Positions 901 through 58,900 of a DNA stretch of 64,000 nt are shown piece by piece. A program made the position numbers and the translations under genes. The notes under the pieces are model-generated. The model had not been told where the DNA came from. It made no database searches and saw only the letters and a program-made list of their open reading frames with translations. Each line of letters opens with the position of its first letter. The stretch's first letter is position 1. The DNA is from Octopus sinensis (lineage: Eukaryota). Location: assembly GCF_006345805.1 (NCBI RefSeq), contig NC_042997.1, positions 205,964,001-206,028,000 of the forward strand, written 5' to 3'.

Positions 901-3900
901 TTTTGTTTGAAATCTCAATTTTGTAAGAATTTTCATTTTTGTGAGGAGCTCCATTCTTGTTAGAATTTTCATATTTGAAAGAATTATCATTTTTGTTGCA
1001 AGTCCCATTTAGTGAGGAGTTCCATTTTTGTAAGGAGTCCCCGTCTTGTTAGATGTCTCAGTTTTGTGAAAAATTCCACTGTTGTTAAAAGTCTCATTGT
1101 CGTGAAAATTACCATAGAAATCACATAGTTTAAAAAAAACCCTTACCTGTGAGAAGTCCCATTCTTGTGAGAAGTACCGTTGTTGTTAGACGTCCCAGTT
1201 TTGTGAGATGTCCCATTCTTGTTTAGAAGTCTCCTTTTTGTCAGAAGTCTGAATTTTGTGAGAAGCCTCATTTTTTGAAAAGCCCCATTTTTATGAGAAG
1301 TCCTGTTCTTGTTAGGTAACCCATCTTTGTAAGAATTCCCATTTTTGTTAGTAGTCCCATTTTTTTGAAAAGCCCCATGATCCTTACAAGTCCTTTGATC
1401 TTGAGAAATTCAATTCCTGTTAGAATTCTCATAGTTGTGTGAAGTCCCATTCCTGTTAATAGATCTATTCTTGTGAGAAGTATTGCTCTTCTTAAGAGTC
1501 CCATTTTTGGACAAGTACCATTCTTGTTAGAACCCCTATTACAATGAAAAGCCCTGTTTTTATTAGAAGTGCAATTATTGTGAGAAGTCTCAATTTTATT
1601 AGAAATTCCATTGTTGTTATATCTCCCGTTTTCACTTCTTAGAAGTACCATTTTTTTGAGAGTTTCCATTCTTGTTAAAAGTCACATCCTTGTTAGAAGT
1701 TCCATTTTTGTGAGAAGTCCCATTTGATTTTCGTGAAAATACCCATGCTTCTTACAAGGCCTGTTATTGTGAGAAATTCAATTCCTGTTAGAAGTCTCAT
1801 TCTTGTTAGGAGTCCCATTTTTGTGAGAAGTCTCATTATTCTTAATAAACCTATTCTTGTGAGAAGTACTGTTCTTCTTGGGAGTCCCATTTTTGTGACA
1901 AGTTCATTGTTGTTAGAATTTCCATACTTGTAAGGAGCCCCATTCTTGTTAGATGTCTTATTATTAACAGAAGTTACATTCTTGCTAGAAGTTCCATTCT
2001 TTTTAGAAGTCTCAATCTTATTAGGACCACCTTGTTAGAAGTCTGAGTTTTGTGAAAATTCTCATTTTTGGGAGATGTTCCCCTCTTGTTAGAAGTCCCA
2101 ATTTTTTGAGATGTTCCATTTTGTGATAAGTCTCACACTTGTTAGAAGTCTCATTTTTGTGAGAAGTCCCATTCATACGAGATATATACCATTCTTTTAG
2201 AAGTCTCACTTAATTGAGAAATCCCATTCCTGTCAGAAGTCCTCCCCTTGTTACAAGTCCCATTTTTATTAGTAGTCCCAATGTTCTTAGAAGTCCTCTT
2301 CTTTTTTGATGTCCCATTTTTATGAAGAGTCCCATTATTGTGAGTAGTCCTACTTTTGTGAGTAGTCCCATTCTTGTTAGAAGTTTCATTTTTGTGAGAA
2401 GTCCCTTATTGTTTGAAGCCCCTTTTGTGTTACAAGCCCCCTTCTTTTTAGAAGTTCAATTTTATTTGTTTTCCAATTCTTGTTAGAAGTCCTATTTTTA
2501 TTAGGAGCACCTTCCTGTTAGAAGTTTGATTTTTGTGAAAATTTACATTTCTGGGAGACGTTCCTTTCTTTTTAGAAGTCCTAGTTTTGTGAGAATTTCC
2601 ATTCTCATTAAAAGTACAAAACGTGTGTGAAGTCCCACTCTTATTAGAAGTCGTAAACATGTCAGAAGTTCCATTTTTGTTAGACATCCTGTTAGAAGTC
2701 TAATTTTTGCTAGAAGTCCCATTCATGTGAGAAGTCTTATTCTATTTAGATGGCTCATTCTTGTTAGAAGTCCCATTTTTGTCAGAAGTGCCACTCATGC
2801 TGCAAGTTCCATTTTTGTAAGAAGTTCTATTCTTGTGAGAAGTACTCTTTCTGTTTGATGTCTGTTTTTTTGTGAGAAGCCCTATTCTTGTAAACCTTCC
2901 CCTTCTTGATAGAATTCTCATTCTTGTTAGAATTCTCATTTTTGTTAGTAGTCCCAATGTTGTTTGAAGCCTTATTCTTATTCAAAATTCTATTTTCATG
3001 AAAAGTTCTATTCTTGTGATGAATCTCATTTTTGGGAGAAGATTCATTTTTGTGAGAAATCTCATTTTTGTGAGAAGACCCATTCTTGTTAGAAGTCCCA
3101 TTCTTTTTAGAAGTCCTATTCTTGTTAGAAGTCCTATTTTTGTTAGCACTCTCATTCTTTTCAGAAATCTCATTTTCGTGAGAAATTTCATTTTTGTGAG
3201 AACTGACATTTTTAAGAGAAATCTAATTTTTGTGAGAAGTTTTATTTCTGTGAGAAATCTCATTTTTGTAAGAAGTCCTATTCTTGTTATATGTCCATAC
3301 TTGTTAGAAATCACATTTTCGTCAAAAGCCCCATTCTTCTTAGAAATCCCATTTGTGTAAGAAATCCCATTAAAAATCTAATTTCTGTTTTAGAAGTGCC
3401 GTGTTTTTTAGGATCCCCCTTTTGTTAGAAGTCCGATCTTTGGGAAAAGACCCATATTTGGCTGAAGTCCACTTCTTGTTACTTCAAGGCCTAATCTCAT
3501 TAGATGCACAAATTTGTGAGAAGTCCCACTGTTGTTAGAAATCACATACATATTAGAACTTCCATTGTTGTTAGAAGTCCCATTGTTGCTAGATGTCCCA
3601 TTCATGTGAAAAGCCCAATTTTTGTGAGTAGTCCCATTTTTGTGAGAAGTCCTAATCTCCTTAGGATTTTCATTTTTGTGAGAAGTCCCTTTTTTGTTTG
3701 AAATCCCTTACTTGTTAGAAGTCCTCTCTTTTGTGAGAAATTTCATTCTTGTTAGAAGTCCCATTTCCATTAGCAGTCCCATTGTTGTTTGAAGTCCCTT
3801 TCTTTTTAGAAGTTCCATTTTGGTGAAAAGCCCCATTTTTGTGACAAATCTCATTTTTGTGAGAAGTCGCATTCTTGTGAAATTTTCCTTTCCTGTTGGA

Positions 3901-4009
3901 TGTCCCTTTTTTATGAGAAGTCCCATTCTTTTTCGAAGTACCATTGTTGTGGAAAGTCATATTTTTGTGAGAAATTACATTGTTTTGCAAAGTCCCATTC
4001 TTATGAGAT
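900..4009. repeat. Degenerate 18/36-bp minisatellite (AGAAGTCCCATTCTTGTT / AGAAGTCCCATTTTTGTG)
   Basis: About 3.1 kb of imperfect 18-bp units. The periodic ORFs (RSPILVRSPIFV on +, SHKNGTSNKNGT on -) reflect the repeat. It runs into the gap. Confidence 0.9.
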
Positions 4010-4109
4010 NNNNNNNNNNNNNNNNNNNNNNNNNNNNNNNNNNNNNNNNNNNNNNNNNNNNNNNNNNNNNNNNNNNNNNNNNNNNNNNNNNNNNNNNNNN
4101 NNNNNNNNN
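4010..4109. other. Assembly gap (100 N)
   Basis: Run of exactly 100 N. Confidence 1.
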
Positions 4110-4355
4110 TTTGGGGAAATTTGGCTGCTATTTCTACCAGGTCTAGCTGCCATGTAGGGGTCTCCCTCATAGGCTCATACATACATATATACATAGATAA
4201 GACAGTAAGGTGTGATTTGGGGGAAATTTGGCTGCTATTTCTACCAGGTCTAGCTACCATGTAGAGGTCCCCCTCATTGGCTCATATATATATATACATA
4301 CATAAGACAGTAAGGTGTGATTTGAGGGAGATTTGGCTGCTGTTTCTACCAGGTC
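4110..4355. repeat. Short tandem array (~3 copies, ~110-120 bp) of an interspersed repeat end
   Basis: GGTGTGATTTG(G/A)GGGA(A/G)ATTTGGCTGCT..TTTCTACCAGGTCT occurs three times. Reverse-complement relatives lie at ~7455-7505 and ~37280-37330. Confidence 0.75.
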
Positions 4356-5536: not shown

Positions 5537-5823
5537 TGTATATATATATGTTTGTGTGCATATATGTGTGTGTAGGTACATATATATGTATGTATGTGTG
5601 TGTATGTATATATATATATATATGTATGTGTGCATATATATGTGTGTGTAGGTACGTATATATATGTATGTGTGTGTATGTATGTATGTGTGTATGTATA
5701 TATATATATGTATGTGTGCATATATATGTGTGTGTAGGTACATATATATGTATGTATGTATGCATGCATGCATGTATGTATGTATATGTATGTGTGTGCG
5801 CGCGTGTATGTGTGTGTGTGTGT
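5537..5823. repeat. Compound (TA)/(TG)/(TATG) microsatellite
   Basis: Visible directly; it explains the YIYIHT/MYVCV ORFs. Confidence 0.95.
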
Positions 5824-5910
5824 ATAGCCATATACTGAAAGTTTATGAGAAAAACCATGCCAACTAGTGGCCACCATTAGAGAACACCAAGTATAGCGAG
5901 GAGAGTGTCA

Positions 5911-6273
5911 AAAATGAAAGTGAAATCTTCTCTAACCTACATTCGACTTCATTTCCTATAAAAAAAACTATCTCCGGTTTTTCTTCTTTTGAAAAGTTGT
6001 TTTTTTTTTATGTCGTCTGTTTTAGATAATAATAAAACTTTATCACAAAGTTTTCTTGGAAAATAAATTGTGTAAAAGAGGGCAGAGGGGAAGTGTTTTT
6101 CTCGGAAGATAATGATAAACTTCTCACAAAGTTTTCTTGGAAAATAAATTGTATAAAAGAGGGCAGAGGGTAAGTGTATTTTCTGGGAAAACCATTGATG
6201 TCATACAAAGTTGTTGTTAAACCAATCGACAGCTTAAAAACGATTAGATAAAGATTATTCAAGTTTCAGTTTT
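5911..6273 (+). promoter_or_regulatory. Candidate IRF/STAT-responsive promoter of the RRM/PARP14-like gene
   Basis: IRF-E AAAATGAAAGTGAAA at 5911-5925. GAS (TTCNNNGAA) at 6053-6061, 6099-6107, 6134-6142 and 6181-6189, inside an ~82-bp tandem duplication (~6027-6190). TATAAAAG at 6152-6159. ISRE-like AAGTTTCAGTTTT at 6261-6273. Function is inferred. Confidence 0.5.
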
Positions 6274-6291
6274 ACTCAGAGTTGTTACGAG
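6185..6291 (+). other. Candidate non-coding first exon (5' end approximate)
   Basis: Strong donor GAG|GTAAGT at 6291/6292 in non-repeat sequence downstream of the TATA. If spliced to 20379, an in-frame TAG (6245-6247) lies upstream of the ATG at 20401 with no intervening in-frame ATG. Confidence 0.4.
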
Positions 6292-6379
6292 GTAAGTTTT
6301 CGTTTTACATCTCTCCATTGCTTTACAAATATTTCACAAAATCGCTTTCAATGCTTTTCCTTTACATTATTACTACACA

Positions 6380-6702
6380 GTGAGGGCGCGTGGCTTAGTG
6401 GTTAGGGCATTCGGCTCATTATCGTAAGGTTGTGAGTTCGATTCCCGGCGACGCGTTGTGTCCTTGAGCAAGACACTTTATTTCACGTTGCTCCAGTCCA
6501 CTCAGCTGGCAAAAATGAGTTGTACTTGTATTTCAAAGGGTCAGCCTCTGTGTCACGCTGATTATCCCCGAGAACTACGTTAAGGGTACACGTGTCTGTG
6601 GAATGCTCAGCCATTTGCACGTTAATTTCACGAGCAAGCTGTTCCGTTGATCGTATCAGCTGGGACCCTCGTCGTCGTAACCGGCGGAGTCTGAAAGAGA
6701 AA
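6380..6702 (+). mobile_element. Full-length tRNA-derived SINE with CORE-like central domain
   Basis: A box TGGCTTAGTGG, B box GTTCGATTC, central GTTGTGTCCTTGAGCAAGACACTT, and an 11-bp TSD ATTACTACACA (6369-6379 / 6703-6713). Confidence 0.85.
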
Positions 6703-7035
6703 ATTACTACACAAATTCGTCTTCTCATTTGAATGGCTTAGCTCTTATTTCTAATAATGTAGGTGTTTCGTAACACACCAGTCACATTTAGTGGCAATTG
6801 TAATTCTCCTTTTTGGTGAAACAGCAAACTGCTCTTTATATATATATATCCTAGTGAAATTTTCTACAAAATACCTTTTATTAGGTGGTGTACATTATGA
6901 TTAAATTGGAATTTAAGGTGAAAAAATCGGTGGTTTCGCACACATACATACTGACATACATTCATGTATTATATGTATGTATGTATTTCTTTCTCCCGTT
7001 TGCTTCTTTTTCTGTTGTCCTTTTCCTCCATCACA

Positions 7036-7037
7036 CT

Positions 7038-7088
<51 letters not shown>

Positions 7089-7143
7089 TACATACATACA
7101 TACATACATACACACATACACACATACATACATACATACATAC
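7036..7143. repeat. (CA)n/(CATA)n microsatellite
   Basis: Visible directly. Confidence 0.95.
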
Positions 7144-7534
7144 TGGAAATTGAAGTTTTGTAGGTATATGTGATGTGTGTCATTATGTATGTCTGCAAAG
7201 CCATCGATATTTTCCCTCTTCAAGCGAATCTACAGCTTCTGAAAGTTATGAAGAAACAAAACCGACGAAGGGGCACTTGTGTAGGTATGCCATGTTTTTC
7301 TGGTCATAAACTGGTGACCGGTAATAAAGTTACAAATAATTTATGTTCCCTCCCCCTAGGACAATCCCCCCAACGGACAAAACCCCCACAGTTTTCCTGT
7401 GACTTTTTTTTCATGTGGATTCCATAAAATTATGTTGAAAGTTTGAACGCGTGTCAAGCTAGAAATCGCAGCCAAATCTCCTCATATAGGCCACACCCTA
7501 GAAGGACACTTGTTTCATTATCAGGGATACTAAC

Positions 7535-11459: not shown

Positions 11460-14421
11460 GAGGACTCTTCATCCTTGCTGTAAGAGGCAAGGGAAACAAC
11501 ACAGGAGTGGCAGATTATGGGTTATAAGGCTTCCTTATTTGGTGAAGCGGGATGTCGCCATGGGTCATCTTCGATGATGGGAGTGATTATTCAATCACAT
11601 TGATCAGCTACCGCCTGTCCTAAACTGGACAGTCCCCAGTCAGTAAAGTGCTGATCCACCACGTATGTCCGCTGCTAAGTGTGTATGGAGCTAGGATAAA
11701 AACTGAAAAGCAGATGTAAAGCCCAGCACCTGGCAAAGGAGGAAGAAAACTGAAATTGATCCCACTGAAACTGGGGACCTGGAATGTCAGAACAATGACA
11801 ACTGAAAGGGACATTACCGACCTGGACAAGACAGAGGACACCAGGAAAAGGGCAATCATTGACAGGGTGCTCACCCGGCTGAATGTAGACATCACTGCCC
11901 TGCAAGAGACAAGACTTGCTGACTCTGGTTCCGTTAGGGAAAGAAATCACACATTCTTCTGGAAGGGTCTTGGAGAAGATGAGAGGAGAATCCATGGTGT
12001 GGGGGTTTGCAGTACACAGAAGATTGCTGAACAAGATCAGTACTCCTCAAGGTATATCTGAGCGCATCACTATCATGGAAGTGGGGACTAAAACTGGAAG
12101 GAACCATCTCATTAGTGCCTATGCCCCGATTGTAACAGCAGAAAATAAGAAGAGAGATCAGTTTTACGAGGAACTTCAGGATGTGATCAACAGTGTCCCA
12201 AAGGCAGACCAACTCTTTCTCATGGGCACTTTCAATGCAAGAGTAGGTGCTGATCACCAAGCATGGCCCAACTGCTTTGGACAGTTTGGACTGGGGAAAA
12301 TCAATGAGAATGTCCAGAGACTCTTAGAATTCTGCACAAATAACAACCTGTACATTACAAACACCTTCTACAATGGCGAAGACTGGCATAAAGTTTCTTG
12401 GTGCCATCCAAGATCAGGTCATTGGCACTAGATTAACTTCATCAACATCAGAAAGAATGATGTCAACACTGTGAAGCAAACAAGATCCTTCCACAGTGCG
12501 GACTGTAACACAGATCATCTGTGGTAAAGATGGTCACAAAAAAAAAACCCACCAAGAGCCGAAAAATCAAAAAAACCTAAGAACAACACAAAAAACACCC
12601 AAGATCCAGCAATGAGAACCAAATTTCAAGAATATGTGGAAGAACAGCTCCAAAATTTAGATAGCTCATCCCCTGACAACATATGGAACAACATGAAATC
12701 AGCAATATATGATTCAGCGTCAAGGGCCTTTGGAACAGATTGACTTTCCAAGGAGGACTAGATCAAAGCCAATGCATCAATACTAATGCCATTACTTGAG
12801 AAAAAGCGCAAATTCTTCATAAAGCACAAGAGAAAGCCAATAGAAAGTAGAAAGCAACAGCTACGTGCTGCAAAATCCAACCTTCCAAAAGAAACTAGAA
12901 AATGTGCCAACCAGCGTGGGATAACTTATGCTTAGAAATTCAACAGGTGAGTGACATGGGTAACATCAGGAAAATGTTTGAAAAGATTAGAGTTGCTATC
13001 GCACCAACAGTGAGTAAAGTGGCACCTCTCAAGTCTGCAACAGGTAACCAGCTGATTGACAAGAAGACACAAAGGAGCAAGATGTTGATAGACATTATGA
13101 AATGACTTCAAAAGCCAGCAGAAAGAGTACTACAAGAGAGCCAGTGCGGTTTTAGATCTAACCACTCAGCAACGGATATGTTCTTCTCCATTCGTCAACT
13201 GCAAGAAAAATGCTGGGAGCAGCAATTCCCACTATATATAGCATTTGTCGATCTGACAAAGGCATTAGATACAGTCAGCAGATCGGGACTGTACATGGTG
13301 CTTGGAAAATGTGGCTGTCCCCCAGTACTACTGCAGCTCTTTGTTTCATTCCATGATGACATGAAGGCCACCATTCAGTTTGAGAGTTTAATATCAGATA
13401 GCTTCAACATCAACAGCGGAGTAAAACAAGGTTGTGTCTTCGCACCAATCAGCATTTACTTTGCTGTATTGCTGCAGTATGCATTTCAAGAGATGCCAGG
13501 AGATGTCTACCTCTGTTGGAGAACTGATCGGTCACTCTTTGATCTTTCTAGAGTTCAGGCCAAGACTAAGATCAATAGAGCAACAATAAGAGATTTTCTC
13601 TTCGCCAACGATGTCGCACTTGTTGCTCACACTGAATTAACTCTACAAATAATGATGGACCACCTATCATCAGCATGCAAAACCTTCAGTTTGGTCATCA
13701 GTGTAAAGAAGACAGTCATCCTCACTCTGGAGGGTACAGTGAAGGACCATATCAAGCTTGATGACAAACAGCTTGGGACAGTGGACAGGTTCTTCTATCT
13801 AGGGTCTACCATTTCCTCTACTACTACACTTGAGAATGAGATTAATGTCAGGATAGGGAAGACAGCAACAACTTTTGGAAGGCTGACAAAACGAGTATGG
13901 AAGAACAAGAGATTAGACATCTAGATAAAAAGATCAGGATTTATGAAGCATTTGTTTTCAACACATTCCTCTATGGATCTGAAAGATGGACCTTGTACAG
14001 CAGACAGGAAAGGTGCCTCGGCATTTTCCATCTCAGATGCTTCCGCAAGATCTTAGGGCTAACATGGCGTGACAAGGTCACCAGTGTTCAAGTGCTGGCG
14101 CAGGCAAATCTTCAAAGCATGACAGCTTTCTTGTGTATGAGAAGACTGAGGTGGCTGGGGCATGTTAGGAGAATGGATGACCATCGAATCCTGAAGCAAC
14201 TGCTCTATGGAAAACTGGCTCAGGGCAAGAGACCAAGGGGAAGACCAAAACTGAGGTATAAGGACACTTGCAAAATTAGTTTTTCCAAGTGTGAGGTGGA
14301 TGTCAGCACTTGGGAAGAGAGGGCTGAGGACAGAACAACATGGAGGACTGTGGTGAAGGAAGGAACTGCTTTGCTAAAGAGCAGCTACAGAAACAAACAT
14401 GTTGAGAAGTGTAGAGGTTGA
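11460..14421 (+). mobile_element. Near full-length decayed RTE (BovB-like) LINE, APE + RT
   Basis: LGTWNVRTM..ITALQETRL (APE); FVDLTKALDTV..GVKQGCVFAP..FLFANDVAL (RT); RRLRWLGHVRRM..GKRPRGRPKLRYKD (C-terminus). Multiple stops and frameshifts. Confidence 0.92.
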
Positions 14422-14422
14422 T

Positions 14423-16490
14423 GACATGCAAACCAAGCCTTTTCTATGGCCTCCTCAAAATCCACAAGAGTCAAATTATTACCAATGCCTGCAAATGAAT
14501 CCAGGTCTATACATAAATATCCCAACACCAGAAGACCTATTATTGTGGGCCCAGCCTGTGAAACACACTGCCTAAGCAAATTTCTGGACATACTATTGAA
14601 ACCTTTCCTCAAATACATTAAAAGTTTCATTAGAGACAATCTGGACATGCTAGAGCATCTACCAAAAACCACCAATGAAGAAGCTCTATTTGTCTCCTTC
14701 GATGTCATCAACCTCTACACCAACATTCCACATGACTACGGAATAGAGGCAATAAAATTCTGGTTAGAAAAATACCCTGAAGTTCTCCTGGATCGCATAA
14801 ACCAGACTTTTGTCATTGAATCCTTGAAGTTCATCCTACAAAATAATTACTTCCTATTTGATGCAACATACTACCACCAAAAATACGGTATTGCGATGGG
14901 AACAAAAGCAGCACCTGTCCTTGCAAACCTAATAATGGTTTTCTTTGAATCTACCTTATATGAAGTTTCGCTCCAAAAATTTGGAACCCCATTCCACCAG
15001 TATATAAGGGAAAACTGAAAAAGGTACCTAGACAATTGTTTTATCATCTGGAATGAAACCTATGATAAACTCCTGGATTTTATATCCACACTGAACAATA
15101 TTATCCCCAACATTCAATTTACAATGGAATATAGCAAGAAACAGCTCCCATTTCTGGACATTTTGATTTTTAAAATCCAACAACCAAATTGCAACTGACA
15201 TTTACTACAAACCAACAGACTCAAAACAGTATCTCCTTTTCTGTTCATGCCATCCTAAACACACCAAAATAAGTATCCCATTCAATCTTGCAAAAAGGAT
15301 CTGTACAATTGTATCTGACACAACCACTCGGGAACTTTGCCTACAAGACCTCAGAATAACACTCATTGAACGTCAATACCCACCTACACTTATAGACCAT
15401 GGAATTGAATGTGTCAAGAAATTGGACACAGACATACTAAGGGTAACAAAACAAAACACCACACCTCACTTTAAATCACTCCCATACATATCAACCCACA
15501 ACCAATGAAGCATACAACACAATTAGACAAAATCTCTCTCTGCTCACTCAAGACCCAAAAATGAACAACATCCTAAATCCACATAAATTACTAAAATGCA
15601 AAGGACAAGACAAATCACTCAAGAGACTCCTAACAAATGCAAAACTATACTCAATACATATGATACCAACAGTTAAAAATGCAGATGACCTAATTGTGGT
15701 ACATGCCCATACCTAACTGAAGGCTCAGAATTTATATTCCAGCAAGGAGTAAAATTCTCAATTAAGACCAACTTCACATATGCTTCCCAGAACCTTAACT
15801 ATGTCCAAACCTGCTCAGGAGGTGGCCACATTTATGTGAGCCAAATGAGCCTTACTTTGAGATGCAGAGTCACGCTGCATAAAGAACAGATTCGTTTCCT
15901 CAATACAGGCAGATAGCCCTTAGCGAACATGTTGATAGATGTGCAAGAAATAAAATGCTGAATTTCCAAATCTTTCCAGTATACGAATTCAAAGATTCGA
16001 TCTCCTTACCAGAACGCCTAAACAAGGAAAACCTGTTCATACAAAAGGCGGTGAGCTGGCAGAAACGTTAGCACGCCGAGTGAAATGCTTAGCTGTATTT
16101 CGTCTGCCGTTACGTTCTGAGTTCAAATTTCTCTGAGGTTGACTTTGCCTTTCATCCTTTCGGAGTCGATTCATTAAGTACCAGTTACGCACTGGGGTCG
16201 ATGTAATCGACTTAATCTGTTTGTCTGTCCTTGTTTGTCCTCTCTGTGTTTAGCCCCTAGTGGGTAGTAAAGAAATACATACAAAAGTACAGACCACACC
16301 TTAATAAACAAACTTGACAACTTCAAAAATTATACTTAGGAATTAGTTGTCCCCCTTGCCCCTTGTTACTTCCCTTGGTCCACACTCTAATTTTTCAAGC
16401 ATCCAAAATGGCGAGACCCCTTTGTCACAAGTATTGATTACTGTACAATGTCCCTTGAAAAGCTAATTTAAATAGCGAAAACTGGTTGGA
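14423..16490 (+). mobile_element. 5'-truncated Penelope-like element (RT + GIY-YIG remnant + 3' region)
   Basis: RRPIIVGP..SFDVINLYTNIPH..GIAMGTKAAPVLANL, then RYLDNCF; decayed Cys-rich/GIY-YIG region ~15690-16040; degenerate hammerhead-like motif at ~16454-16481. Confidence 0.85.
16048..16277 (+). mobile_element. tRNA-derived SINE (Meta/MESC-like core) inserted in the Penelope 3' end
   Basis: Full head GGCGGTGAGCTGGCAGAAACGTTAGCAC, core TTTCATCCTTTCGGAGTCGA..AAGTACCAG, and a 10-bp TSD CATACAAAAG (16038-16047 / 16278-16287). Confidence 0.88.
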
Positions 16491-20020: not shown

Positions 20021-20400
20021 TTAAGCCATGTGATAATGGCATCGATTCAAAACAATGTGAATAGACAGGCATTACATTTGACCGAGTAATCCGAATCCAC
20101 AAGTCATTCTGTAGACATTATGGTTGGAGGCATGTTGTAAGCAGTATTCTTCACTTGCACGGATGTGCGTGAACCACTTGAAGAATTGGATGCAGGTGGA
20201 TATTGGAGGTGTTAGGATGTTGTTTCAAATAACTAGGGGAAGGATTTTCATCTCTCCCTTAACTGTGAGAAAGAGAAATAATATGAGAGAGAGGGAGTGA
20301 AAAACAACTTTGAGTACAAATGATGTATTCAATGCCTTAACGATGTTTTTTCCTAATTATTTTCTTTTCATTTTGCAGAGTAAAAATACCTGTTGAAATC

Positions 20401-20413
20401 ATGGCAGAGAAAG
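20401..20413 (+). CDS. Host gene first coding exon (exon 20379-20413; MAEK + phase-1 G)
   Basis: Pyrimidine tract TTTTCTTTTCATTTTGCAG acceptor, strong Kozak ATCATGG, and donor AAG|GTATTT. Its phase matches the 37509 exon. Confidence 0.6.
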
Positions 20414-22500: not shown

Positions 22501-24780
22501 TCTATTCAGTGTTTTTAAATCTGTCTAAACTGATAATCTGTTTCTTACCATGCATATCCAAAGTTATAGTTTTATCTTTAATTGACAAAACTTTAAAAGG
22601 TCCAGTGTATTTATAATTCAGTGAATGATGACTAGCATCATAACATATAAATACATGAGTCCAAGAATTGATATCGGAAGGGAGGAAACTTTTAATATTT
22701 TGTAATTTACTTGTAAAAGAAGGAACATCAGAATTTGCAAAAGTACCTAATGGTGCTTTAATGTGATGATTCACTTTTGCTTCTTGGCACTGCATACACG
22801 ATTGAACCCAAGAACGAATATCCTTATTCATGCTGGGCCAAACAAATTGACTCGATATTAATTTTAATGAAGCTCCAATACCAGGATAAGATAAATTATG
22901 TAAGGTAGAAAAAACAACTTTTCTATGTCTTTCAGGCACAAATGGTCTAGAAATACCAGTAGAAATATCACACCTAACCCTAACCTTAACCCTCACCCTA
23001 ACCCCACATATATAAAAAAATAAAAATTTTACGGAAAGTGACGATCTTCTTCAAATGTAAACAAATACACGTACCACTGGAAGCTGTTCTTGAACTTGTT
23101 GCAAGCAACAGCAGTAATTGTATTCACCTCAAAAGACATCATTAATTGGTTGAAATTGCCGAAATACAAGAAATTAAACAAGAAATAGCTTACAAAATAC
23201 AGAATTTTCTCAAGAAAGCCAAGAGAAAAAGATGTTTTATGCGACACATTCTACCAGCATACGAAGTTTAAAAGTGTTTAGTTACAAAGAAATTATTTTT
23301 AAAATCTGCCGGTCAAAGTGAAAAGATCCATTTTCAACACCCTTCATATACTGTATATCCACAGTATACTGTGAAATATAATCAAGGTGTCTAATTTATT
23401 TGGGAGAATATTTTTCAGAAGAATTTTTTAGTGCATGTGTCAATGGTTTATGGTCAGTAAATAATGTAAATGACCTACCTTCAAGAAGATGTCTGAAGTA
23501 TTTAGTTAACAAGTAAGCTGCCAATAATTCTCAGCCGAAAACACTGTGTTTCGTTTCTGGTGCCTTGAATTTCTTTGAAAAGAATGATAATGGTGGCCAA
23601 GAACCACAATGAAACTGTTGTAAAACTCCACCGATTCCAACATCAACTACTAATGATAATTTTGCTTCAGGAACCGGATGACTCAAAAGTGTTTCTTCAC
23701 AAAGTTTTCCTTTTATGCAATGAAAGGCCTGTAATTCTTCACCTTTTAAAGCTATAGCTTCATTTTTCTTTTTCCTATTCTTTAATAATTCAGTTAGAGG
23801 AAATAGAATTTCTGTGCAATTGTGGAATGAAACGTCTCTAAAAATTAATGAGTCCTAAAAATTCTCAATGCTTTTTGTAAAGAATTTGGTATTGGAAATT
23901 TGTTATTAGCTTCAACTTCGTCTGGCAGTGGGTGAATTCCAGCTTTATCAATGAGATGACCTAAAAAACATACAGTGCGTTCACTGAAAACACACTTTGA
24001 TGGATTTATCACTATACCATATTTAGTCAGTCTTTCAAAAATATGTTTTAAGTGATTTTCATGAACTTCTTCTGGCGGACTAGCAATGAGAATATCGTCT
24101 ATATTAGCAAATACAAAAGGTAAATCTTTTGTTACTTTGTCAATGAATCTCTGAATCCTCAATCCAAAAGGCATACAAAATAATTCATACAAGTGAAACG
24201 GAGTTGTAATTGTAGTTTTTGGTATATCATTCTCTTCAACAAGAATTTGATTGTATGCTCTAACTAAATCTATTTTCAAAATGTTATTACAACCACTCAA
24301 TGAAGCTGCAAAATCATGGATATGTGGAATAGAATAGTTATCTTGTAGTGTTTTTGCATTAAGCTGTCTAAAATCTCTGCATGGATGCCAGTCTGTGAGA
24401 TTTTTTTTTACCAAAACTAAAAGTGTAGACCAAGTACTGCTAGAAGGCTGAATTATTCTGAGGTCTAACATGTGACAAAATGTGGCCTTAGCAATCTTTA
24501 ATTTCTCTTGATATAGTCTACAAGGTTTGGAAAAACTTGGTGGTCCATGGGTCACAATGTGATGACTGACTGAATGAACACATTTGGTGTTTAGAGCTAA
24601 TGGTTTTGTAAATTCAGGGTAATTCTTCAAAATCCTGTAATAATGATTTTTGGAGTATGCCATAAAATATAACAGACTAATTGTCGCATTCCCGCATCTC
24701 ATGCCTTGAATGTTCCTCAATTTATAATGGTGATTATTCTCCAGGGTAGAATTTGGAATCCATGTCAGTTGGTCACCAAT
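22500..24780 (-). mobile_element. Decayed Ty3/Gypsy element (RT, RNase H, partial integrase)
   Basis: RT ORF 23845-24720 (DFRQLNAKT..KIDLVRAYNQI..FANIDDILIAS). RNase H ~23430-23740 (LSFFSKK..ELLAAY..FTLFTDHKPL). Integrase zinc region 22502-22996. PBS-like TGGTGACC at 24771-24778 on the - strand. An unrelated insert lies at ~22970-23350. Confidence 0.85.
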
Positions 24781-37508: not shown

Positions 37509-37682
37509 ATGCAGAAAATCTAGTCTGGCAAGAAGATGCAATGATTGTGTCAAATGGCCCCAAAGACATGTCTGAAGAAATGTTAATTGATTTTTTGGAA
37601 GAGAACGGGAAATTAGAAATTCTACGTGTCTTCCCTGGAAGAAAACCTGGAACTTTTCTTGTGTATTGCGAAAATGATATTG
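37509..37682 (+). CDS. Host gene internal exon: RRM-like domain (PARP14/PARP10-like N-terminus)
   Basis: Acceptor ATTTTCAG| and donor TG|GTAAGT; 174 nt, phase 1-1, open frame: DAENLVWQEDAMIVSNGPKDMSEEMLIDFLEENGKLEILRVFPGRKPGTFLVYCENDI. Confidence 0.85.
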
Positions 37683-42731: not shown

Positions 42732-42965
42732 ATTTTGAGGATGTTCAGAGGATGTGCCAAAACAACCCCTTAAAAGGAAATCAACTGAAAGTGGATAGAA
42801 TTAAGGAAATAAACAGTGTTCAAGTGAAAAACGTTTCTTCAAATGTCAGCTCTGACAGTCTTCGAAGATATTTTGGAAACAGTAAAAGAAGTTCTGGTGG
42901 AGATATTTCTTCAGTTCTACAACAAACCTCTGATACTTATATTATAAGTTTTAAAGAGGCGTGTG
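42732..42965 (+). CDS. Host gene internal exon: second RRM-like domain (PARP14/PARP10-like)
   Basis: Acceptor TTTATTGCAG| and donor TG|GTAAGT; 234 nt, phase 1-1: DFEDVQRMCQNNPLKGNQLKVDRIKEINSVQVKNVSSNVSSDSLRRYFGNSKRSSGGDISSVLQQTSDTYIISFKEAC. It resembles the V.NV....D.L..YFEN.KRSGGG.V motif of PARP14/PARP10/NMI RRMs. Confidence 0.9.
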
Positions 42966-49008: not shown

Positions 49009-51101
49009 TGTTGTTGTTATATATATATAGTATTGAGTATTAAAGGAAGTAGTGAGTACTTAGTATGAAAGATTAAGAAAATGAGAGAGACTGAAACAAC
49101 GTGTTAACGATACAAGATACTTTATTCGACTGCCGTTGTTGTACAAGTTAATTGTTTTGGCGGGAAACAAAGTGAAAGTCCTTTTATCAAGGGAGACAAT
49201 GGGCGACGTTGATTGTTCATGTTTGCTGTGATGATTATATAACATCTTCCTTTTTTTTTTTTTTTTAAATTTTTTTTTTATATCATCTGTATCTACAGGG
49301 AATAATTATTCGTCGTCCACTTTTTGTTGTTTTATTATTTTGTAGTGTTGAATTCTGTAGTTGTGCTGTTTTTGTTTTTTCATGCGTGTTTGTTGACTTT
49401 GGAAATATATTTTCATAATCTAATTCTTCTGTTATGCGAACGTGTTCGTTTGTTTTAAGAATATGTTGTCTATTTCGTTTGACTGTATTACCTTCCTCTG
49501 TTATTACTAAGTATGAACGAGGTTGCTCTAGTTTTTTAATTATTTTTCCCCTTCTAAACCAATTGTTGTTAAACTTAACTCTAACCGTGTCGTGTGGTTT
49601 TAACTCTGGGAGTTCTGTTGTAATGTTTGATTTCTTCTTTTCGTGAAGCCTGATACCAATTTTGTCGTGTAGTATGTTTGGGAGATTTGTTCACAATGTT
49701 CTATTCATTATTTGATTTGCAGTTGTGGTTTTGGAATTATATTTCTATATTCTCTGAATGGCAGTACGGTTATGTCTGCTCCTGTATCTATTTTGAATGT
49801 TACATTCGAGTTGTTCACTTTTAGTTCGACCGTCCAAATGTCTTTTGGAGTCTTGAACTTTTCGATTTTGTGCACGCGGGAATTATTTGCAGTGATCATT
49901 TCGAGTACATGTGTATCGTCATCTGATTCATCGTCGGTATGTATCTCTACTTTATGTACAAATTTTCTTGATTTGCACATTTTTGCATAGTGTCCTTGTT
50001 TCTTGCATTTTTCACATGTCTTGTGAAATGCTGGGCATTTATTTCTTTTGTGATTATAACCACAATAGTGACAGTTAGTGACGTAGTGTTGACTTGGCGC
50101 TTGAAACTTCGCGGGCTTTCTGTCACTTCCGCCTTGTTCGTTTTGATGTCTGGATTGCATATGGCGGGTTATTTGAGTTTTGGCGCCTTTTCTGTCGTGT
50201 TGACTATATACCCTCGAGATTTCGTTATCTCTTGTTTCGGATGTGGCATTTAGCATCCTTGATTGGAGTCGTGTTTGCTCTGCACTCTGACCTGCTTGAA
50301 TTGTTTTTTGTAGGTCTAAATTTGGTTCTCTCAATAATCTTTCTCTTAATCTCATGTCTCTGATTCCACATATCAGAATATCTTTGGTGAGACTGTCTGT
50401 GAGGTTGCCGAATTCGCACTGTTGTGCCTTTTGGCGCAACTCTACTACGTACTCATCGAATTTTTGATGTTCCGCTTGTCCACATGTGAAGAATTTGTGT
50501 CTTAGGAAAGTTATGTTTTTCCTGGGTTCACAATATGCATCGAATTTTTCGATTACTGTCTGAAGGTTCATTTCTTCGTCGGGTGAATCGAAATCCAGTG
50601 TGGAATGGATATCTCGGCCTTTAGAACCGATGCAAGTTAAAAACATTGAAGTTTTTACATTGTCTGGCTTCATGTCACTTTCTGTTGCTATCAAAAAGAG
50701 ATTGAATTCTTTTTTCCACTTTTTCCATGCTGCGGCTAGATTTTCCTGATTAAAGTCTAGGTCTTTTGGATGCGGTAAATTTTCCATTTCGTCTTTGAAG
50801 TATGATTTCAACTTCTTTTTTCCTTTGGTTTCTGTATTTTGGGTTCTTTTAGTATTCTGACACCATGTTGTTGTTATATATATATAGTATTGAGTATTAA
50901 AGGAAGTAGTGAGTACTTAGTATGAAAGATTAAGAAAATGAGAGAGACTGAAACAACGTGTTAACGATACAAGATACTTTATTCGACTGCCGTTGTTGTA
51001 CAAGTTAATTGTTTTGGCGGGAAACAAAGTGAAAGTCCTTTTATCAAGGGAGACAATGGGCGACGTTGATTGTTCATGTTTGTTGTGATGATTATATAAC
51101 A
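49009..51101 (-). mobile_element. Young internally deleted Ty3/Gypsy LTR element (2093 bp, gag-only)
   Basis: 236-bp LTRs TG..CA at 49009-49244 and 50866-51101 differing at one visible position; 5-bp TSD GCCAC; PBS TGGTGTCAGAA (matches tRNA-Leu CAA 3' end); PPT AAAA..GGAAGA. Confidence 0.95.
49708..50811 (-). CDS. Gypsy Gag with two CCHC knuckles plus N-terminal part of the aspartic protease
   Basis: Open 367-aa ORF: WKKWKKEF..YCEPRKNITFLRHKFF..QKFDEYVVELR..CHYCGYNH..CEKCKKQGHYAKMC..FKIDTGADITVL, then a stop. Confidence 0.9.
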   Translation of the reverse strand: MKSYFKDEMENLPHPKDLDFNQENLAAAWKKWKKEFNLFLIATESDMKPDNVKTSMFLTCIGSKGRDIHSTLDFDSPDEEMNLQTVIEKFDAYCEPRKNITFLRHKFFTCGQAEHQKFDEYVVELRQKAQQCEFGNLTDSLTKDILICGIRDMRLRERLLREPNLDLQKTIQAGQSAEQTRLQSRMLNATSETRDNEISRVYSQHDRKGAKTQITRHMQSRHQNEQGGSDRKPAKFQAPSQHYVTNCHYCGYNHKRNKCPAFHKTCEKCKKQGHYAKMCKSRKFVHKVEIHTDDESDDDTHVLEMITANNSRVHKIEKFKTPKDIWTVELKVNNSNVTFKIDTGADITVLPFREYRNIIPKPQLQIK

Positions 51102-52380: not shown

Positions 52381-53060
52381 ATGCCCCCAAAGAAGAGTGC
52401 TCGCATTGGAAGAAGGACAGCTGATTCAGAGGCTAAGAGGGCCAGAACGGCCAATGAGGTGCCCCAAGACAGAGCTACTCGATTAGCTCAGAATGCCACT
52501 GCCATGGCCAATGCAAGGGCAGTTGAAACCACAGAACAAACACAGGCCTGCCATTCTCAAGATGCCACTGCCATTGCCAACACATGATCTACAGAAACCT
52601 CTGAGCAGAGGCGCACAAGGCAATAGAAACAATCTGCGGTGCGAGGCTAGAGTTGAAATTTCAAGCCCAAAGCCTCAATTCTGGAGCATGAAGGCCTTCA
52701 ACTACGTTCCAACGATGAACTACTCCTCTCGCTCTGACATTCGTATTGGAAATATGTGCTCAATCTACGACCATTGCAGTGCAATGAAATGGCCCAGTGA
52801 GACACCCAGCATGTGCTGTTCCAAGGGCAAAGTCCAGCTCCCTCCTTTTCAAAACCCTCCACAGCCTCTTCAGGACCTTCTCACTGGCACTGTCCCAAGC
52901 TCATCGGATTTTCTACAAGCCATCCGAATCTACAATTCTGCTTTCCAGATGACATCTTTTGGCGCCAAAGTTGTCCAAGCGGAAGGGTGGATGCTCACCT
53001 TTAAGGTGCAGGGGTAAGTGTACCACCTGATTGGATCTCTGCTGCCAACAAACAACAACT
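52381..53060 (+). mobile_element. Autonomous-type Helitron Rep N-terminal remnant
   Basis: IGNM..CSAMKWPSETPSMCCSKGKVQLP..IRIYNSAFQMTSFGA..TFKVQG*VYHLIGSLLP, the typical Helitron Rep/helicase N-terminus. Frameshifted and truncated. Confidence 0.88.
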
Positions 53061-55613: not shown

Positions 55614-55952
55614 ATGATGATGATGATGATAATCAACTCTACTGGGAGCACAGGGCCTCAACGATAATAACATCACAAAGGCACCCTTGGGGTGCTCTGT
55701 AAAAGTGTATGTGGGGTGTCAGGTAAAAGTAGCCAACATGCCCTGTAAAGTGGTTCCTATAAGGAAGGAGATACAGCTGTAGAAATCATGTAAATTCAGA
55801 TTGAAGTCTGGAGCAGCTCTCCAGCTTCCCAGGTCTGTTCAAACAGTTCAACACATGCCACCATGGACAACGGATCTACATGATGATGATGATGGTAGCA
55901 TGTAAGATATAATATTGCTATAATGAATCTTACCATCATAACAATGTTTAAT

Positions 55953-58900
55953 ATTCCAGTGATGTTTATGGTCAATAAAATAAGTACCAGTTGAGCACTG
56001 TGGTTGATGTAATTGACTTAGCCACTCTCCCGAAATTGCTGGCCTTGTGCCAAAATTTGAAACCAACATTCCAGTGATGTTTATGGTCAATAAAATAAGT
56101 ACCAGTTGAGCACTGGGGTTGATGTAATTGACTTAGCCACTCTCCCGAAATTGCTGGTCTTGTGCCAAAATTTGAAACCAACATTCCAGTGATGTTTATG
56201 GTCAATAAAATAAGTACCAGTTGAGCACTGGGGTTGATGTAATTGACTTAGCCACTCTCCCGAAATTGCTGGTCTTGTGCGTAAATTTGAAACCAAAATT
56301 ACAGTGATGTTTATGGTCAATAAAATAAATACCAGTTGAGCACTGGGGTTGATGTAATTGACTTAGCCACTCTCCTGAAATTGCTGGCCTTGTGCCAAAA
56401 TTTGAAACCAAAATTACAGTGATGTTTATGGTCAATAAAATAAGTACCAGTTGAGCACTGGGGTTGATGTAATTGACTTAGCCACTCTCCTGAAATTGCT
56501 GGCATTGTGCCAAAATTTGAAACCAAAATTCCAGTGATGTTTATGGTCAATAAATAAGTACCAGTTAGCACTGGGGTTGATGTAATTGACTTAGCCACTC
56601 TCCTAATTGCTGGCCTTGTGCCAAAATTTGAAACCAAAATTCCAGTGATGTTTATGGTCAATAAAATAAGTACCAGTTGTGCACTGGGTTGATGTAATTG
56701 ACTTAGCCACTCTCCTGAAATTGCTGGCCTTGTGCCAAATTTGAAACCAAATTCCAGTGATGTTTATGGTCAATAAAATAAGTACCAGTTGAAGCACTGG
56801 GGTTGATGTAATTGACTTAGCACTCTCCTAAATTGCTGGCCTTGTGCCAAAATTTGAAACCAACATTCCAGTGATGTTTATGGTCAATAAATAAGTACCA
56901 GTTGAGCACTGGGGTTGATGTAATTGACTTAGCCACTCTCCTGAAATTGCTGGCCTTGTGCCAAAATTTGAAACCAAAATTCCAGTGATGTTTATGGTCA
57001 ATAAAATAAGTACCAGTTGAGCACTGGGGTTGATGTAATTGACTTAGCACTCTCCTAAATTGCTGGCCTTGTGCCAAAATTTGAAACCAAAATTCCAGTG
57101 ATGTTTATGGTCAATAAATAAGTACCAGTTGAGCACTGGGGTTGATGTAATTGACTTAGCCACTCTCCTGAAATTGCTGGCCTTGTGCCAAAATTTGAAA
57201 CAAATTCCAGTGATGTTTATGGTCAATAAAATAAGTACCAGTTGAGCACTGGGGTTGATGTAATTGACTTAGCCACTCTCCTGAAATTGCTGGCCTTGTG
57301 CCAAAATTTGAAACCAAAATTCCAGTGATGTTTATGGTCAATAAAATAAGTACCAGTTGAGCACTGGGGTTGATGTAATTGACTTAGCCACTCTCCTAAA
57401 TTGCTGGCCTTGTGCCAAAATTTGAAACAAAATTCCAGTGATGTTTATTGGTCAATAAAATAAGTACCAGTTGTGCACTGGGGTTGATGTAATTGACTTA
57501 GCCACTCTCCTGAAATTGCTGGCCTTGTGCCAAAATTTGAAACCAAAATTCCAGTGATGTTTATGGTCAATAAAATAAGTACCAGTTGAGCACTGGGTTG
57601 ATGTAATTGACTTAGCCACTCTCCTGAAATTGCTGGCCTTCTGCCAAAATTTGAAACCAAAATTCCAGTGATGTTTATGGTCAATAAAATAAGTACCAGT
57701 TGAGCACTGGGGTTGATGTAATTGACTTAGCCACTCTCCTGAAATTGCTGGCCTTGTGCCAAAATTTGAAACCAAAATTTCAGTGATGTTTATGGTCAAT
57801 AAAATAAGTACCAGTTGAGCACTGGGGTTGATGTAATTGACTTAGCCACTCTCCTGAAATTGCTGGCCTTGTGCCAAAATTTGAAACCAAAATTCCAGTG
57901 ATGTTTATGGTCAATAAAATAAGTACCAGTTGAGCACTGGGGTTGATGTAATTGACTTATCCACTCTCCTGAAATTGCTGGCCTTGTGCCAAAATTTGAA
58001 ACCAAAATTCCAGTGATGTTTATGGTCAATAAAATAAGTACCAGTTGAGCACTGGGGTTGATGTAATTGACTTAGCCACTCTCCTGAATTGCTGGCCTTG
58101 TGCCAAAATTTGAAACCAAAATTCCAGTGATGTTTATGGTCAATAAAATAAGTACCAGTTGAGCACTGGGGTTGATGTAATTGACTTAGCCACTCTCCTG
58201 AAATTGCTGGCCTTGTGCCAAAATTTGAAACCAAAATTCCAGTGATGTTTATGGTCAATAAAATAAGTACCAGTTGAGCACTGGGGTTGATGTAATTGAC
58301 TTAGCCACTCTCCTGAAATTGCTGGCCTTGTGCCAAAATTTGAGAACCAAAATTTCAGTGATGTTTATGGTCAATAAAATAAGTACCAGTTGAGCACTGG
58401 GGTTGATGTAATTGACTTAGCCACTCTCCTGAAATTGCTGGCCTTGTGCCAAAATTTGAGACCAAAATTCCAGTGATGTTTATGGTCAATAAAATAAGTA
58501 CCAGTTGAGCACTGGGGTTGATGTAATTGACTTAGCACTCTCCTAATTGCTGGCCTTGTGCCAAAATTTGAAACAAAATTCCAGTGATGTTTATGGTCAA
58601 TAAAATAAGTACCAGTTGAGCACTGGGGTTGATGTAATTGACTTAGCCACTCTCCTGAAATTGCTGGCCTTGTGCCAAAATTTGAAACAAAATTCCAGTG
58701 ATGTTTATGGTCAATAAAATAAGTACCAGTTGAGCACTGGGGTTGATGTAATTGACTTAGCCACTCTCCTGAAATTGCTGGCCTTGTGCCAAAATTTGAA
58801 ACCAAAATTCCAGTGATGTTTATGGTCAATAAAATAAGTACCAGTTGAGCACTGGGGTTGATGTAATTGACTTAGCCACTCTCCTGAAATTGCTGGCCTT

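What the first reader, a model, noticed from the sequence alone, without database searches (positions are those of the whole stretch)
5911..6297. Interferon-stimulated-gene-like promoter (IRF-E + 4 GAS + ISRE + TATA) upstream of a PARP14-like gene in a probable cephalopod
Seen in sequence: within ~360 bp of non-TE sequence there is an IRF element (AAAATGAAAGTGAAA, 5911-5925). Four TTCNNNGAA sites follow (6053, 6099, 6134, 6181), then TATAAAAG (6152), an ISRE-like AAGTTTCAGTTTT (6261) and a strong donor (6292). Established: TTCN3GAA is the STAT GAS consensus, GAAANNGAAA is the IRF/ISRE consensus, vertebrate PARP14/PARP9/PARP10 are IFN/STAT1-induced, and molluscs have IRF and STAT homologues without canonical interferon. 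Inference: this is the promoter of the downstream RRM gene, part of an IRF/JAK-STAT antiviral regulon in cephalopods. Caveat: the four GAS are only two independent sites because of the duplication, and the genome is AT-rich.
Basis: partly seen in the sequence, partly recalled or inferred. Interest (0 to 1): 0.72.

Follow-up and report, generated by a model that had tools for sequence, protein, structure and literature searches.

The report
Putative promoter of octopus PARP14-like gene
A short stretch upstream of an Octopus sinensis PARP14-like gene carries the listed interferon-type motifs and recurs upstream of several sister genes, so it is a plausible promoter, but the motif cluster could be chance and no transcript evidence was obtainable.

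Summary
Every listed motif is at its stated coordinate. The window is Octopus sinensis chromosome CM016859.1. The downstream exons (ATG exon 20379-20413, RRM exons 37509-37682 and 42732-42965) belong to a large PARP14-like family (RRM-KH-macro-PARP).

The "ISG-like" signature is weak. Two GAS plus one IRF site within 390 bp arises in 16-29% of simulated 64-kb sequences. The four GAS are two sites doubled by an 81-bp duplication found only in this lineage (three copies in O. vulgaris). One of the two GAS and the cited TATA box are not kept in paralogs.

The segment 5836-6376 is not a repeat within the window. It recurs, same strand, 8-14 kb upstream of the ATG exon in three paralog lineages and the O. 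vulgaris ortholog. The IRF-E, a different TATA-like box (5957), one GAS (6181), a CRE-like site, a CCAAT box and the GT donor at 6292 are kept in 6-7 of 7 copies. This identity does not exceed that of the introns.

One paralog carries 26 tandem copies of the IRF-E unit.

No transcript, TSS or induction data could be reached. The best reading is a promoter plus leader-exon module, possibly IRF-responsive. STAT control is unsupported.

The parts
5836..6376 (+). Conserved upstream module. It is shared with the O. vulgaris ortholog and with paralog loci, always on the gene strand apart from one extra inverted copy.
   Evidence: BLAST and alignments
5911..5925 (+). IRF-E-like element AAAATGAAAGTGAAA (GAAAGTGAAA core)
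   Evidence: AAAAATGAAAGTGAA is invariant in 7/7 copies. The unit is amplified to 25.7 copies in L006.
5957..5964 (+).
   Evidence: TTTCCTAT.AAAA is invariant in 7 copies; the seventh copy reads TATTAAAA
6024..6189 (+). 81-bp tandem duplication: 2 units here, 3 in O. vulgaris, 1 in all other copies
6053..6061 (+). GAS1 TTCTTGGAA, repeated at 6134-6142. Not conserved in paralogs.
6099..6107 (+). GAS2 in unit copy 1 (TTCTCGGAA)
6152..6159 (+). Paralogs read GTGTAAAAG, GTTAAAAG, TATAGAAG or GTTAAGAG at this position.
6181..6189 (+). GAS2 TTCTGGGAA. TTCNNNGAA is kept in 7/7 copies with a variable spacer, shifted by 1 nt in one copy. It lies between a T-run and an A-run.
6196..6203 (+). CRE/ATF-like TGATGTCA, invariant
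6222..6226 (+). CCAAT box, invariant
6234..6240 (+). Second TATA-like TTAAAAA (kept in 6/7 copies), about 30 bp upstream of TCAGTT
6261..6273 (+). AAGTTTCAGTTTT. Either ISRE-like (one mismatch to AGTTTCNNTTTC) or an initiator-like TCAGTT.
6290..6297 (+). Consensus 5' splice site AG|GTAAGT. The putative exon ends at 6291. Invariant in 7/7 copies.
20379..20413 (+). Exon with the start codon (ATG at 20401, MAEK, phase 1), preceded by a strong acceptor
37509..37682 (+). RRM exon (DAENLVWQ...CENDI)
42732..42965 (+). RRM exon (RRM_PARP14_3)

Best explanation
Window 5836-6376 is the conserved 5' module of a tandemly amplified octopus PARP14-like gene family. It is most likely a Pol II promoter plus a short untranslated leader exon.

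Proposed mechanism:
- The leader exon ends at the GT donor (6291|6292) and is spliced to the ATG exon at 20379.
- The core elements are an IRF-E (5911-5925) 31 bp upstream of a TATA-like box (5957), then a CRE-like site, a CCAAT box and a second TATA-like/initiator pair (6196-6271).
- An IRF-family factor binding the IRF-E would make the gene inducible by virus or dsRNA, as in oyster IRF/ISRE signalling.
- The GAS motifs are mostly a by-product of a recent 81-bp duplication and of T-run/A-run sequence. They are not evidence of STAT control.

Shown: motif positions, recurrence and orientation of the module, invariance of the motifs, and the exon structure.
Inferred: transcription, TSS position, splicing from 6291, IRF binding and induction.
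For: - The module occurs once in the window.
- It recurs on the gene strand 8-14 kb upstream of the ATG exon in the O. vulgaris ortholog (L002 21944-22648), the P0006/P0007 paralog (L004, L005, L006) and the P0003 paralog (L007).
- Kept in 6-7 of 7 copies: IRF-E, TATA-like 5957, TTCNNNGAA at 6181, TGATGTCA, CCAAT and ACGAG|GTAAG.
- 6181-6297 is the best conserved part of the module (92-95% in three paralog copies and 82.5% in the diverged copy, against 71-88% in the flanking unit).
- The exon-2 acceptor is used by an upstream exon in three paralog gene models, so exon 2 is an internal exon.
- 6290 is the only AGGTAAGT on the + strand upstream of exon 2.
- Exon phases fit and the peptide hits RRM_PARP14_3.
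- The IRF-E unit is expanded to 25.7 tandem copies next to the module in L006.
- Oyster IRFs activate ISRE reporters (PMC5557890, PMC6685332, PMC8218723). PARP14 is listed among oyster antiviral effector genes differentially expressed between diets during OsHV-1 infection (PMC12803857).
Against: - No transcript, TSS or expression evidence could be reached. The look-ups return only the coding range, and the metagenome scan was empty.
- The motif cluster is within chance.
- Module identity among paralogs (76-95%) does not exceed that of introns (88-96%). Conservation therefore cannot separate constraint from recent duplication.
- The O. vulgaris ortholog model P0002 starts 12 kb upstream of the orthologous block. 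That model is dubious, however.
- The P0006/7/8 paralogs have another upstream exon with its own TATAAAAG.
- Extra copies of the block occur without a gene of their own: L002 2636-3112 (inverted), L002 5656-7581, L007 1-239.
- The block was not found within 10 kb upstream of P0010, P0155 or P0004.
Confidence: 0.45

Rival explanations
1. Inert, co-duplicated intergenic or intronic DNA. The segment travels with the segmental duplications of this gene cluster. The IRF/GAS/TATA motifs are chance matches in AT-rich sequence, and the real TSS lies elsewhere.
For: - The cluster is expected in 16-29% of random 64-kb sequences, and other such clusters occur in neighbouring loci.
- Conservation is no higher than in introns.
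- GAS1 and the cited TATA are not conserved.
- The region is prone to minisatellite expansion (81-bp and 30-bp units).
- Annotated models place first coding exons elsewhere.
Against: - A perfect consensus donor, a CCAAT box, a CRE-like palindrome and the IRF-E are kept in all 7 copies, including the most diverged ones.
- Orientation relative to the gene is constant in 3 paralog lineages.
- Exon 2 needs an upstream exon.
Confidence: 0.3
2. One reading: an interferon-stimulated-gene-like promoter driven by both IRF and STAT (JAK-STAT), using TATAAAAG at 6152 and a TSS near 6185.
For: - All the motifs are present.
- TTCNNNGAA at 6181 is kept in 7/7 copies with a variable spacer.
- The 81-bp unit carrying two GAS is amplified to 2-3 copies in this lineage.
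- A pathway figure legend in the O. vulgaris hemocyte transcriptome paper lists Stat-1 and IRF3 among its abbreviations; whether those transcripts were found was not checked (PMC4199593).
Against: - GAS1 is absent from all four older paralog copies and is mutated in unit 1 of O. vulgaris.
- The kept GAS overlaps the proposed TSS, is shifted by 1 nt in one copy and lies in a T-run/A-run context.
- TATA 6152 varies among paralogs and is lineage-duplicated.
- There is no enrichment of GAS in the window.
Confidence: 0.12
3. A self-duplicating regulatory repeat (an LTR-like or TE-derived promoter/enhancer cassette, or an alternative promoter or enhancer), rather than the dedicated promoter of this gene.
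For: - Several copies lie within 20 kb in O. vulgaris, one of them inverted, and there are two copies 1.9 kb apart in L007, without matching gene copies.
- Enhancer-like tandem units of 30 bp and 81 bp resemble LTR U3 repeats. That comparison is from memory.
Against: - All copies found lie in the PARP14-like cluster with collinear flanks.
- There are none elsewhere in the roughly 490 kb examined.
- No adjoining TE coding sequence or terminal TG...CA structure was noticed on reading the sequence; neither was searched for.
Confidence: 0.13

Closest known systems
Vertebrate ISG promoters with ISRE/IRF-E close to the TSS (e.g. ISG15, ISG54, the PARP9/DTX3L-PARP14 locus). Cited from established knowledge, not tested here.
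   Same: A GAAANNGAAA-type element a few tens of bp upstream of a TATA-like box, upstream of a macro-PARP family gene.
   Different: - No interferon is known in cephalopods.
- There is no evidence of a TSS, factor binding or induction.
- The ISRE-like element at 6261 has a mismatch in one half-site.
- The motif cluster is within chance.
GAS-driven STAT promoters (e.g. the IRF1 GAS). Cited from established knowledge.
   Same: TTCN3GAA palindromes are present, and one is kept in all module copies.
   Different: - Only one of the two independent sites is conserved.
- It lies in T-run/A-run sequence.
- The copy number comes from a recent 81-bp duplication.
Bivalve IRF/ISRE antiviral signalling: oyster RLR-MAVS and cGAS/STING-TBK1-IRF axes (PMC5557890, PMC6685332, PMC8218723)
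   Same: It is a mollusc. An IRF acting on an ISRE-type element is the proposed activator. PARP14 is listed among antiviral effector genes differentially expressed in OsHV-1-infected oysters (PMC12803857).
   Different: Those studies used reporters and oyster genes. Nothing equivalent was found for cephalopods in the searched literature.
Synthetic (AAGTGA)n virus-inducible enhancers. Cited from memory as a lead only.
   Same: The L006 paralog has 25.7 tandem 30-bp units, each containing AAGTGA within GAAAGTGAAG.
   Different: This is a natural minisatellite with 30-bp spacing and no known function. It is absent from the window copy, which has a single unit.

Membership tests
PARP14-like (macro-PARP) gene | N-terminal PARP14-type RRM repeats | tested here: met
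   The spliced window peptide scores 31.2 bits on RRM_PARP14_3 (cut-off 24) and 26.3 on RRM_1 (cut-off 20.7). It is 98% identical to O. sinensis LOC115232391.
PARP14-like (macro-PARP) gene | Macro domain(s) | tested here: inconclusive
   There is no macro exon in the window. The 99%-identical twin locus L001 has a macro exon at 57901-58152. The window ends inside the satellite that precedes those exons.
PARP14-like (macro-PARP) gene | C-terminal PARP catalytic domain (with or without WWE) | tested here: inconclusive
   Not found in the window or in L001. It is present in family members P0156, P0158 and P0160 (precomputed Pfam PF00644; their C-terminal sequences). P0158 begins MAEKDAENLVWQ like the window gene.
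Interferon-stimulated-gene-type promoter | ISRE/IRF-E motif near the TSS | tested here: inconclusive
   The motif is present and invariant in paralog copies, but the TSS is unknown and the motif is frequent in this genome.
Interferon-stimulated-gene-type promoter | Functional GAS bound by STAT | not testable with these tools
   By sequence alone, one of the two independent sites is conserved and there is no enrichment.
Interferon-stimulated-gene-type promoter | Transcription starts here and is induced by virus, dsRNA or cytokine | not testable with these tools
   No transcript data were reachable. The gene look-ups give only coding ranges.
Pol II core promoter plus first exon | TATA or initiator at the right spacing, and a splice donor joined to the next exon's acceptor | tested here: inconclusive
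   There are three candidate TATA-like boxes (5957, 6152, 6234), an invariant donor and a strong acceptor at 20378|20379. No junction evidence exists.
Structured non-coding RNA gene | Rfam match or unusually stable fold | tested here: not met
   There is no Rfam hit in 5858-6385. The fold of 6181-6300 has z-score 0.30.

The most novel reading that the evidence does not exclude
The octopus PARP14-like gene cluster is controlled by a shared IRF-E-bearing promoter module. The number of IRF sites is tuned paralog by paralog through minisatellite expansion (1 unit here, 2 in L004, about 26 in O. vulgaris L006). That would be the first cis-regulatory evidence for an IRF-driven, interferon-independent antiviral regulon in cephalopods.
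Probability: 0.2. Interest if true: 0.6.

Novelty: new member of a known kind. Interest (0 to 1): 0.3.

Why it matters
If transcription and IRF dependence were shown, this would give cephalopod immunology a concrete, testable promoter. It would link IRF signalling to an expanded macro-PARP family and give an example of inducibility evolving through tandem amplification of binding sites. As it stands it is a reasonable promoter candidate whose "interferon-like" signature is not statistically distinguishable from chance.

Tried and rejected
**Transcript evidence**
- Two protein searches returned NCBI gene models plus one metaclust fragment (P0009, no contig on record), and no transcript contigs.
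- A metagenome scan for the exon-2 sequence found nothing.

**More distant species**
- The O. bimaculoides locus L010 reaches only exon 3, so the promoter is out of range.
- The full-length genes P0156 and P0158 span more than 100 kb, so no DNA was returned.

**Other paralogs**
- No block lies within 10 kb upstream of P0010 (L008), P0155 (L009) or P0004 (L003).

**Alternative identities**
- ncRNA gene: rejected.
- Repeat within the window: rejected.
- The bacterial-type promoter/terminator scan is irrelevant here.

**An error of mine, corrected**
- In one search the BLAST database also held L003. The "copy A exons" I first placed in L002 belong to L003.

**Conservation as proof of function**
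- Rejected, because introns of the same paralogs are equally or more similar.

Full report
**Observation**

- IRF-E AAAATGAAAGTGAAA at 5911-5925
- TTCNNNGAA at 6053, 6099, 6134 and 6181
- TATAAAAG at 6152
- AAGTTTCAGTTTT at 6261
- AG|GTAAGT, with the intron starting at 6292

An 81-bp tandem duplication (6024-6189, 2.0 copies, 90% identity) explains why four GAS are really two.

Upstream lies a (TG/TA)n microsatellite (5537-5826). Downstream, from 6377, lies a tRNA-like SINE plus microsatellite insertion.

**Chance**

- TTCNNNGAA is not enriched in the window (30 against 24.8 expected).
- GAAANNGAAA is generally frequent (17 against 5.8).
- After collapsing the duplication, this is the only 390-bp stretch in the window with at least 2 GAS and at least 1 GAAANNGAAA.
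- Such a cluster appears in 16-29% of Markov-simulated 64-kb sequences. With the real site densities my Poisson estimate is about 0.66 per window.
- About three clusters not matched to the module occur in about 320 kb of neighbouring octopus loci.
- AGGTAAGT occurs at chance frequency. On the + strand, 6290 is the only one upstream of the ATG exon.

The motif cluster alone is therefore not evidence of function.

**Organism and gene**

The spliced peptide from 20379-20413 (ATG at 20401), 37509-37682 and 42732-42965 is phase-consistent. It is 98% identical to O. sinensis LOC115232391 (P0001).

Window bases 1-702 equal L001 60160-60861 at 100%. That places the window at about CM016859.1:205,964,001-206,028,000.

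Window 18991-60880 is a 98-99% identical copy of L001 8583-50486, 70.5 kb upstream. A 100-N assembly gap (4010-4109) lies between them. The "twin" could therefore be a recent duplication or a haplotig artefact.

Domain evidence:
- Pfam finds RRM_PARP14_3 and RRM_1 above their cut-offs.
- The window has no macro or PARP exon.
- The twin continues into a KH-region exon and a macro exon.
- The family includes full-length RRM-KH-macro-PARP proteins (P0156, P0158, P0160).
- P0158 starts MAEKDAENLVWQ exactly like the window gene.

"PARP14-like" holds for the family. For the window itself only the RRM part is visible.

**The segment in other loci**

The segment has no second copy in the window. It is present in:
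- the O. vulgaris ortholog locus (L002 21944-22648, with three 81-bp units)
- on the gene strand, 8-14 kb upstream of the ATG exon of the P0006/P0007 paralog (L004 6733-7255, L005, L006 6749-7161)
- on the gene strand, upstream of the P0003 paralog (L007 1281-2126)

Extra copies exist at L002 2636-3112 (inverted), L002 5656-7581 (diverged) and L007 1-239.

It was not found within 10 kb upstream of P0010, P0155 or P0004. For P0004, collinearity suggests it lies just outside the fetched flank.

**Motif-by-motif conservation**

| Element | Status across 7 copies |
|---|---|
| IRF-E core AAAAATGAAAGTGAA | invariant in 7/7 |
| TATA-like box at 5957 | 6/7 |
| GAS1 (6053/6134) | only in the window lineage; mutated in O. 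vulgaris unit 1 |
| GAS2 (6181) | TTCNNNGAA in 7/7, variable spacer, shifted 1 nt in one copy |
| TGATGTCA | invariant |
| CCAAT | invariant |
| Donor ACGAG\|GTAAG | invariant |
| TTAAAAA | 6/7 |
| AGTTTCA[G/C]TTTT | 6/7 |

The 81-bp duplication is confined to the window lineage. The stretch 6181-6297 is the best conserved part (92-95% in three paralog copies, 82.5% in the diverged L002 copy).

However, introns of the same paralogs are 88-96% identical. The paralogs are too young for conservation to prove constraint.

**Evidence bearing on promoter function**

For:
- Exon 2 is an internal exon in the family. Three models (P0006, P0007, P0008) splice an upstream exon into its acceptor.
- That upstream exon has no homolog in the window. 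The invariant donor at 6291 is therefore the best candidate partner.

Against:
- That paralog exon has its own TATAAAAG about 65 bp upstream of its ATG.
- The O. vulgaris ortholog model P0002 begins with an 8-nt coding exon 12 kb upstream of the orthologous block. I regard that model as weak, because of its tiny first exon and a terminal exon in low-complexity sequence.

No UTR, transcript or expression information was reachable.

**Alternatives**

A structured RNA gene is unlikely. There is no Rfam hit in the segment and the fold z-score is 0.30.

A dispersed TE is unlikely in the sample I could examine. It cannot be excluded genome-wide.

**A noteworthy relative**

In O. vulgaris L006, the 30-bp unit carrying the IRF-E core is repeated 25.7 times directly next to the module. 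It is annotated there as a 273-aa protein with no Pfam match. O. sinensis L004 has two units and the window has one. This shows either plain minisatellite instability or selection on the number of IRF sites.

**Literature**

- Oyster IRFs drive ISRE reporters and an interferon-like response (PMC5557890, PMC6685332, PMC8218723).
- PARP14 is listed among antiviral effector genes that differed in expression between diet conditions in OsHV-1-infected oysters (PMC12803857).
- I found nothing on cephalopod ISG-type promoters.

**Verdict**

The segment is a plausible promoter and leader-exon module of an octopus PARP14-like gene with a conserved IRF-E. The STAT/GAS component and the specific TATA/TSS proposal are not supported. 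The "ISG-like" signature is within chance, and function remains untested.

Noticed in passing
window 18991-60880 vs L001 8583-50486; N-run at window 4010-4109: A 42-kb block is 98-99% identical to a copy 70.5 kb upstream on the same chromosome. A 100-N assembly gap lies between them. This is either a very recent tandem duplication of the PARP14-like gene or a haplotig placed in tandem.
   Followed up: partly
L006 6001-6770 (O. vulgaris OX597814.1): There are 25.7 tandem copies (96% identity) of a 30-bp unit CAAAAATGAAAGTGAAGTCTCTCCAGGCGT carrying the IRF-E core. They abut the promoter-like module and are annotated as a 273-aa protein with no Pfam match.
   Followed up: partly
window 55950-64000: A satellite with a period of about 115 bp runs to the end of the window, inside the intron after the second RRM exon. 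It is also present in L001 and L002 with different lengths.
   Followed up: no
window 6377-7152: A tRNA-like SINE (head at 6386-6455, below the Rfam threshold) plus a (TACA)n microsatellite is inserted 85 bp downstream of the putative donor. The O. vulgaris ortholog has only 79 bp here.
   Followed up: partly
L001 ~50857: The twin gene changes reading frame relative to P0010 and P0158 exactly where the annotated 196-aa product P0001 stops. This is either a real truncation or an assembly indel.
   Followed up: partly
window 37509-37525 vs L007 12836-12906: The window gene lacks the first RRM exon and has an in-frame 63-bp deletion at the start of exon 3 relative to P0003. The same MAEK-DAEN-LVWQ junction is seen in the full-length O. 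vulgaris P0158.
   Followed up: partly
window 11756-15018 (+), 22502-24720 (-), 49708-50811 (-), 52487-53014 (+): By eye, the ORF translations look transposon-derived and fill the introns: LINE endonuclease/RT, LTR-retrotransposon pol, a gag-like ORF and a Helitron-like N-terminus. They were not run against any family library.
   Followed up: no
window 1268-4260: Long ORFs on both strands run through a short-period tandem repeat (GLLTKMRFLTK-like translations). These are probably a minisatellite rather than genes.
   Followed up: no
L003 (O. sinensis CM016859.1, 40.9 Mb): The RRM-only model P0004 (133 aa) lies inside the range of a 677-aa macro-PARP model. This suggests one PARP14-like gene split by the annotation.
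   Followed up: no
window 5537-5826: The (TG/TA)n microsatellite gives many sub-threshold Rfam miRNA hits (mir-297, mir-3149 and others). These are artefacts of simple sequence.
   Followed up: yes
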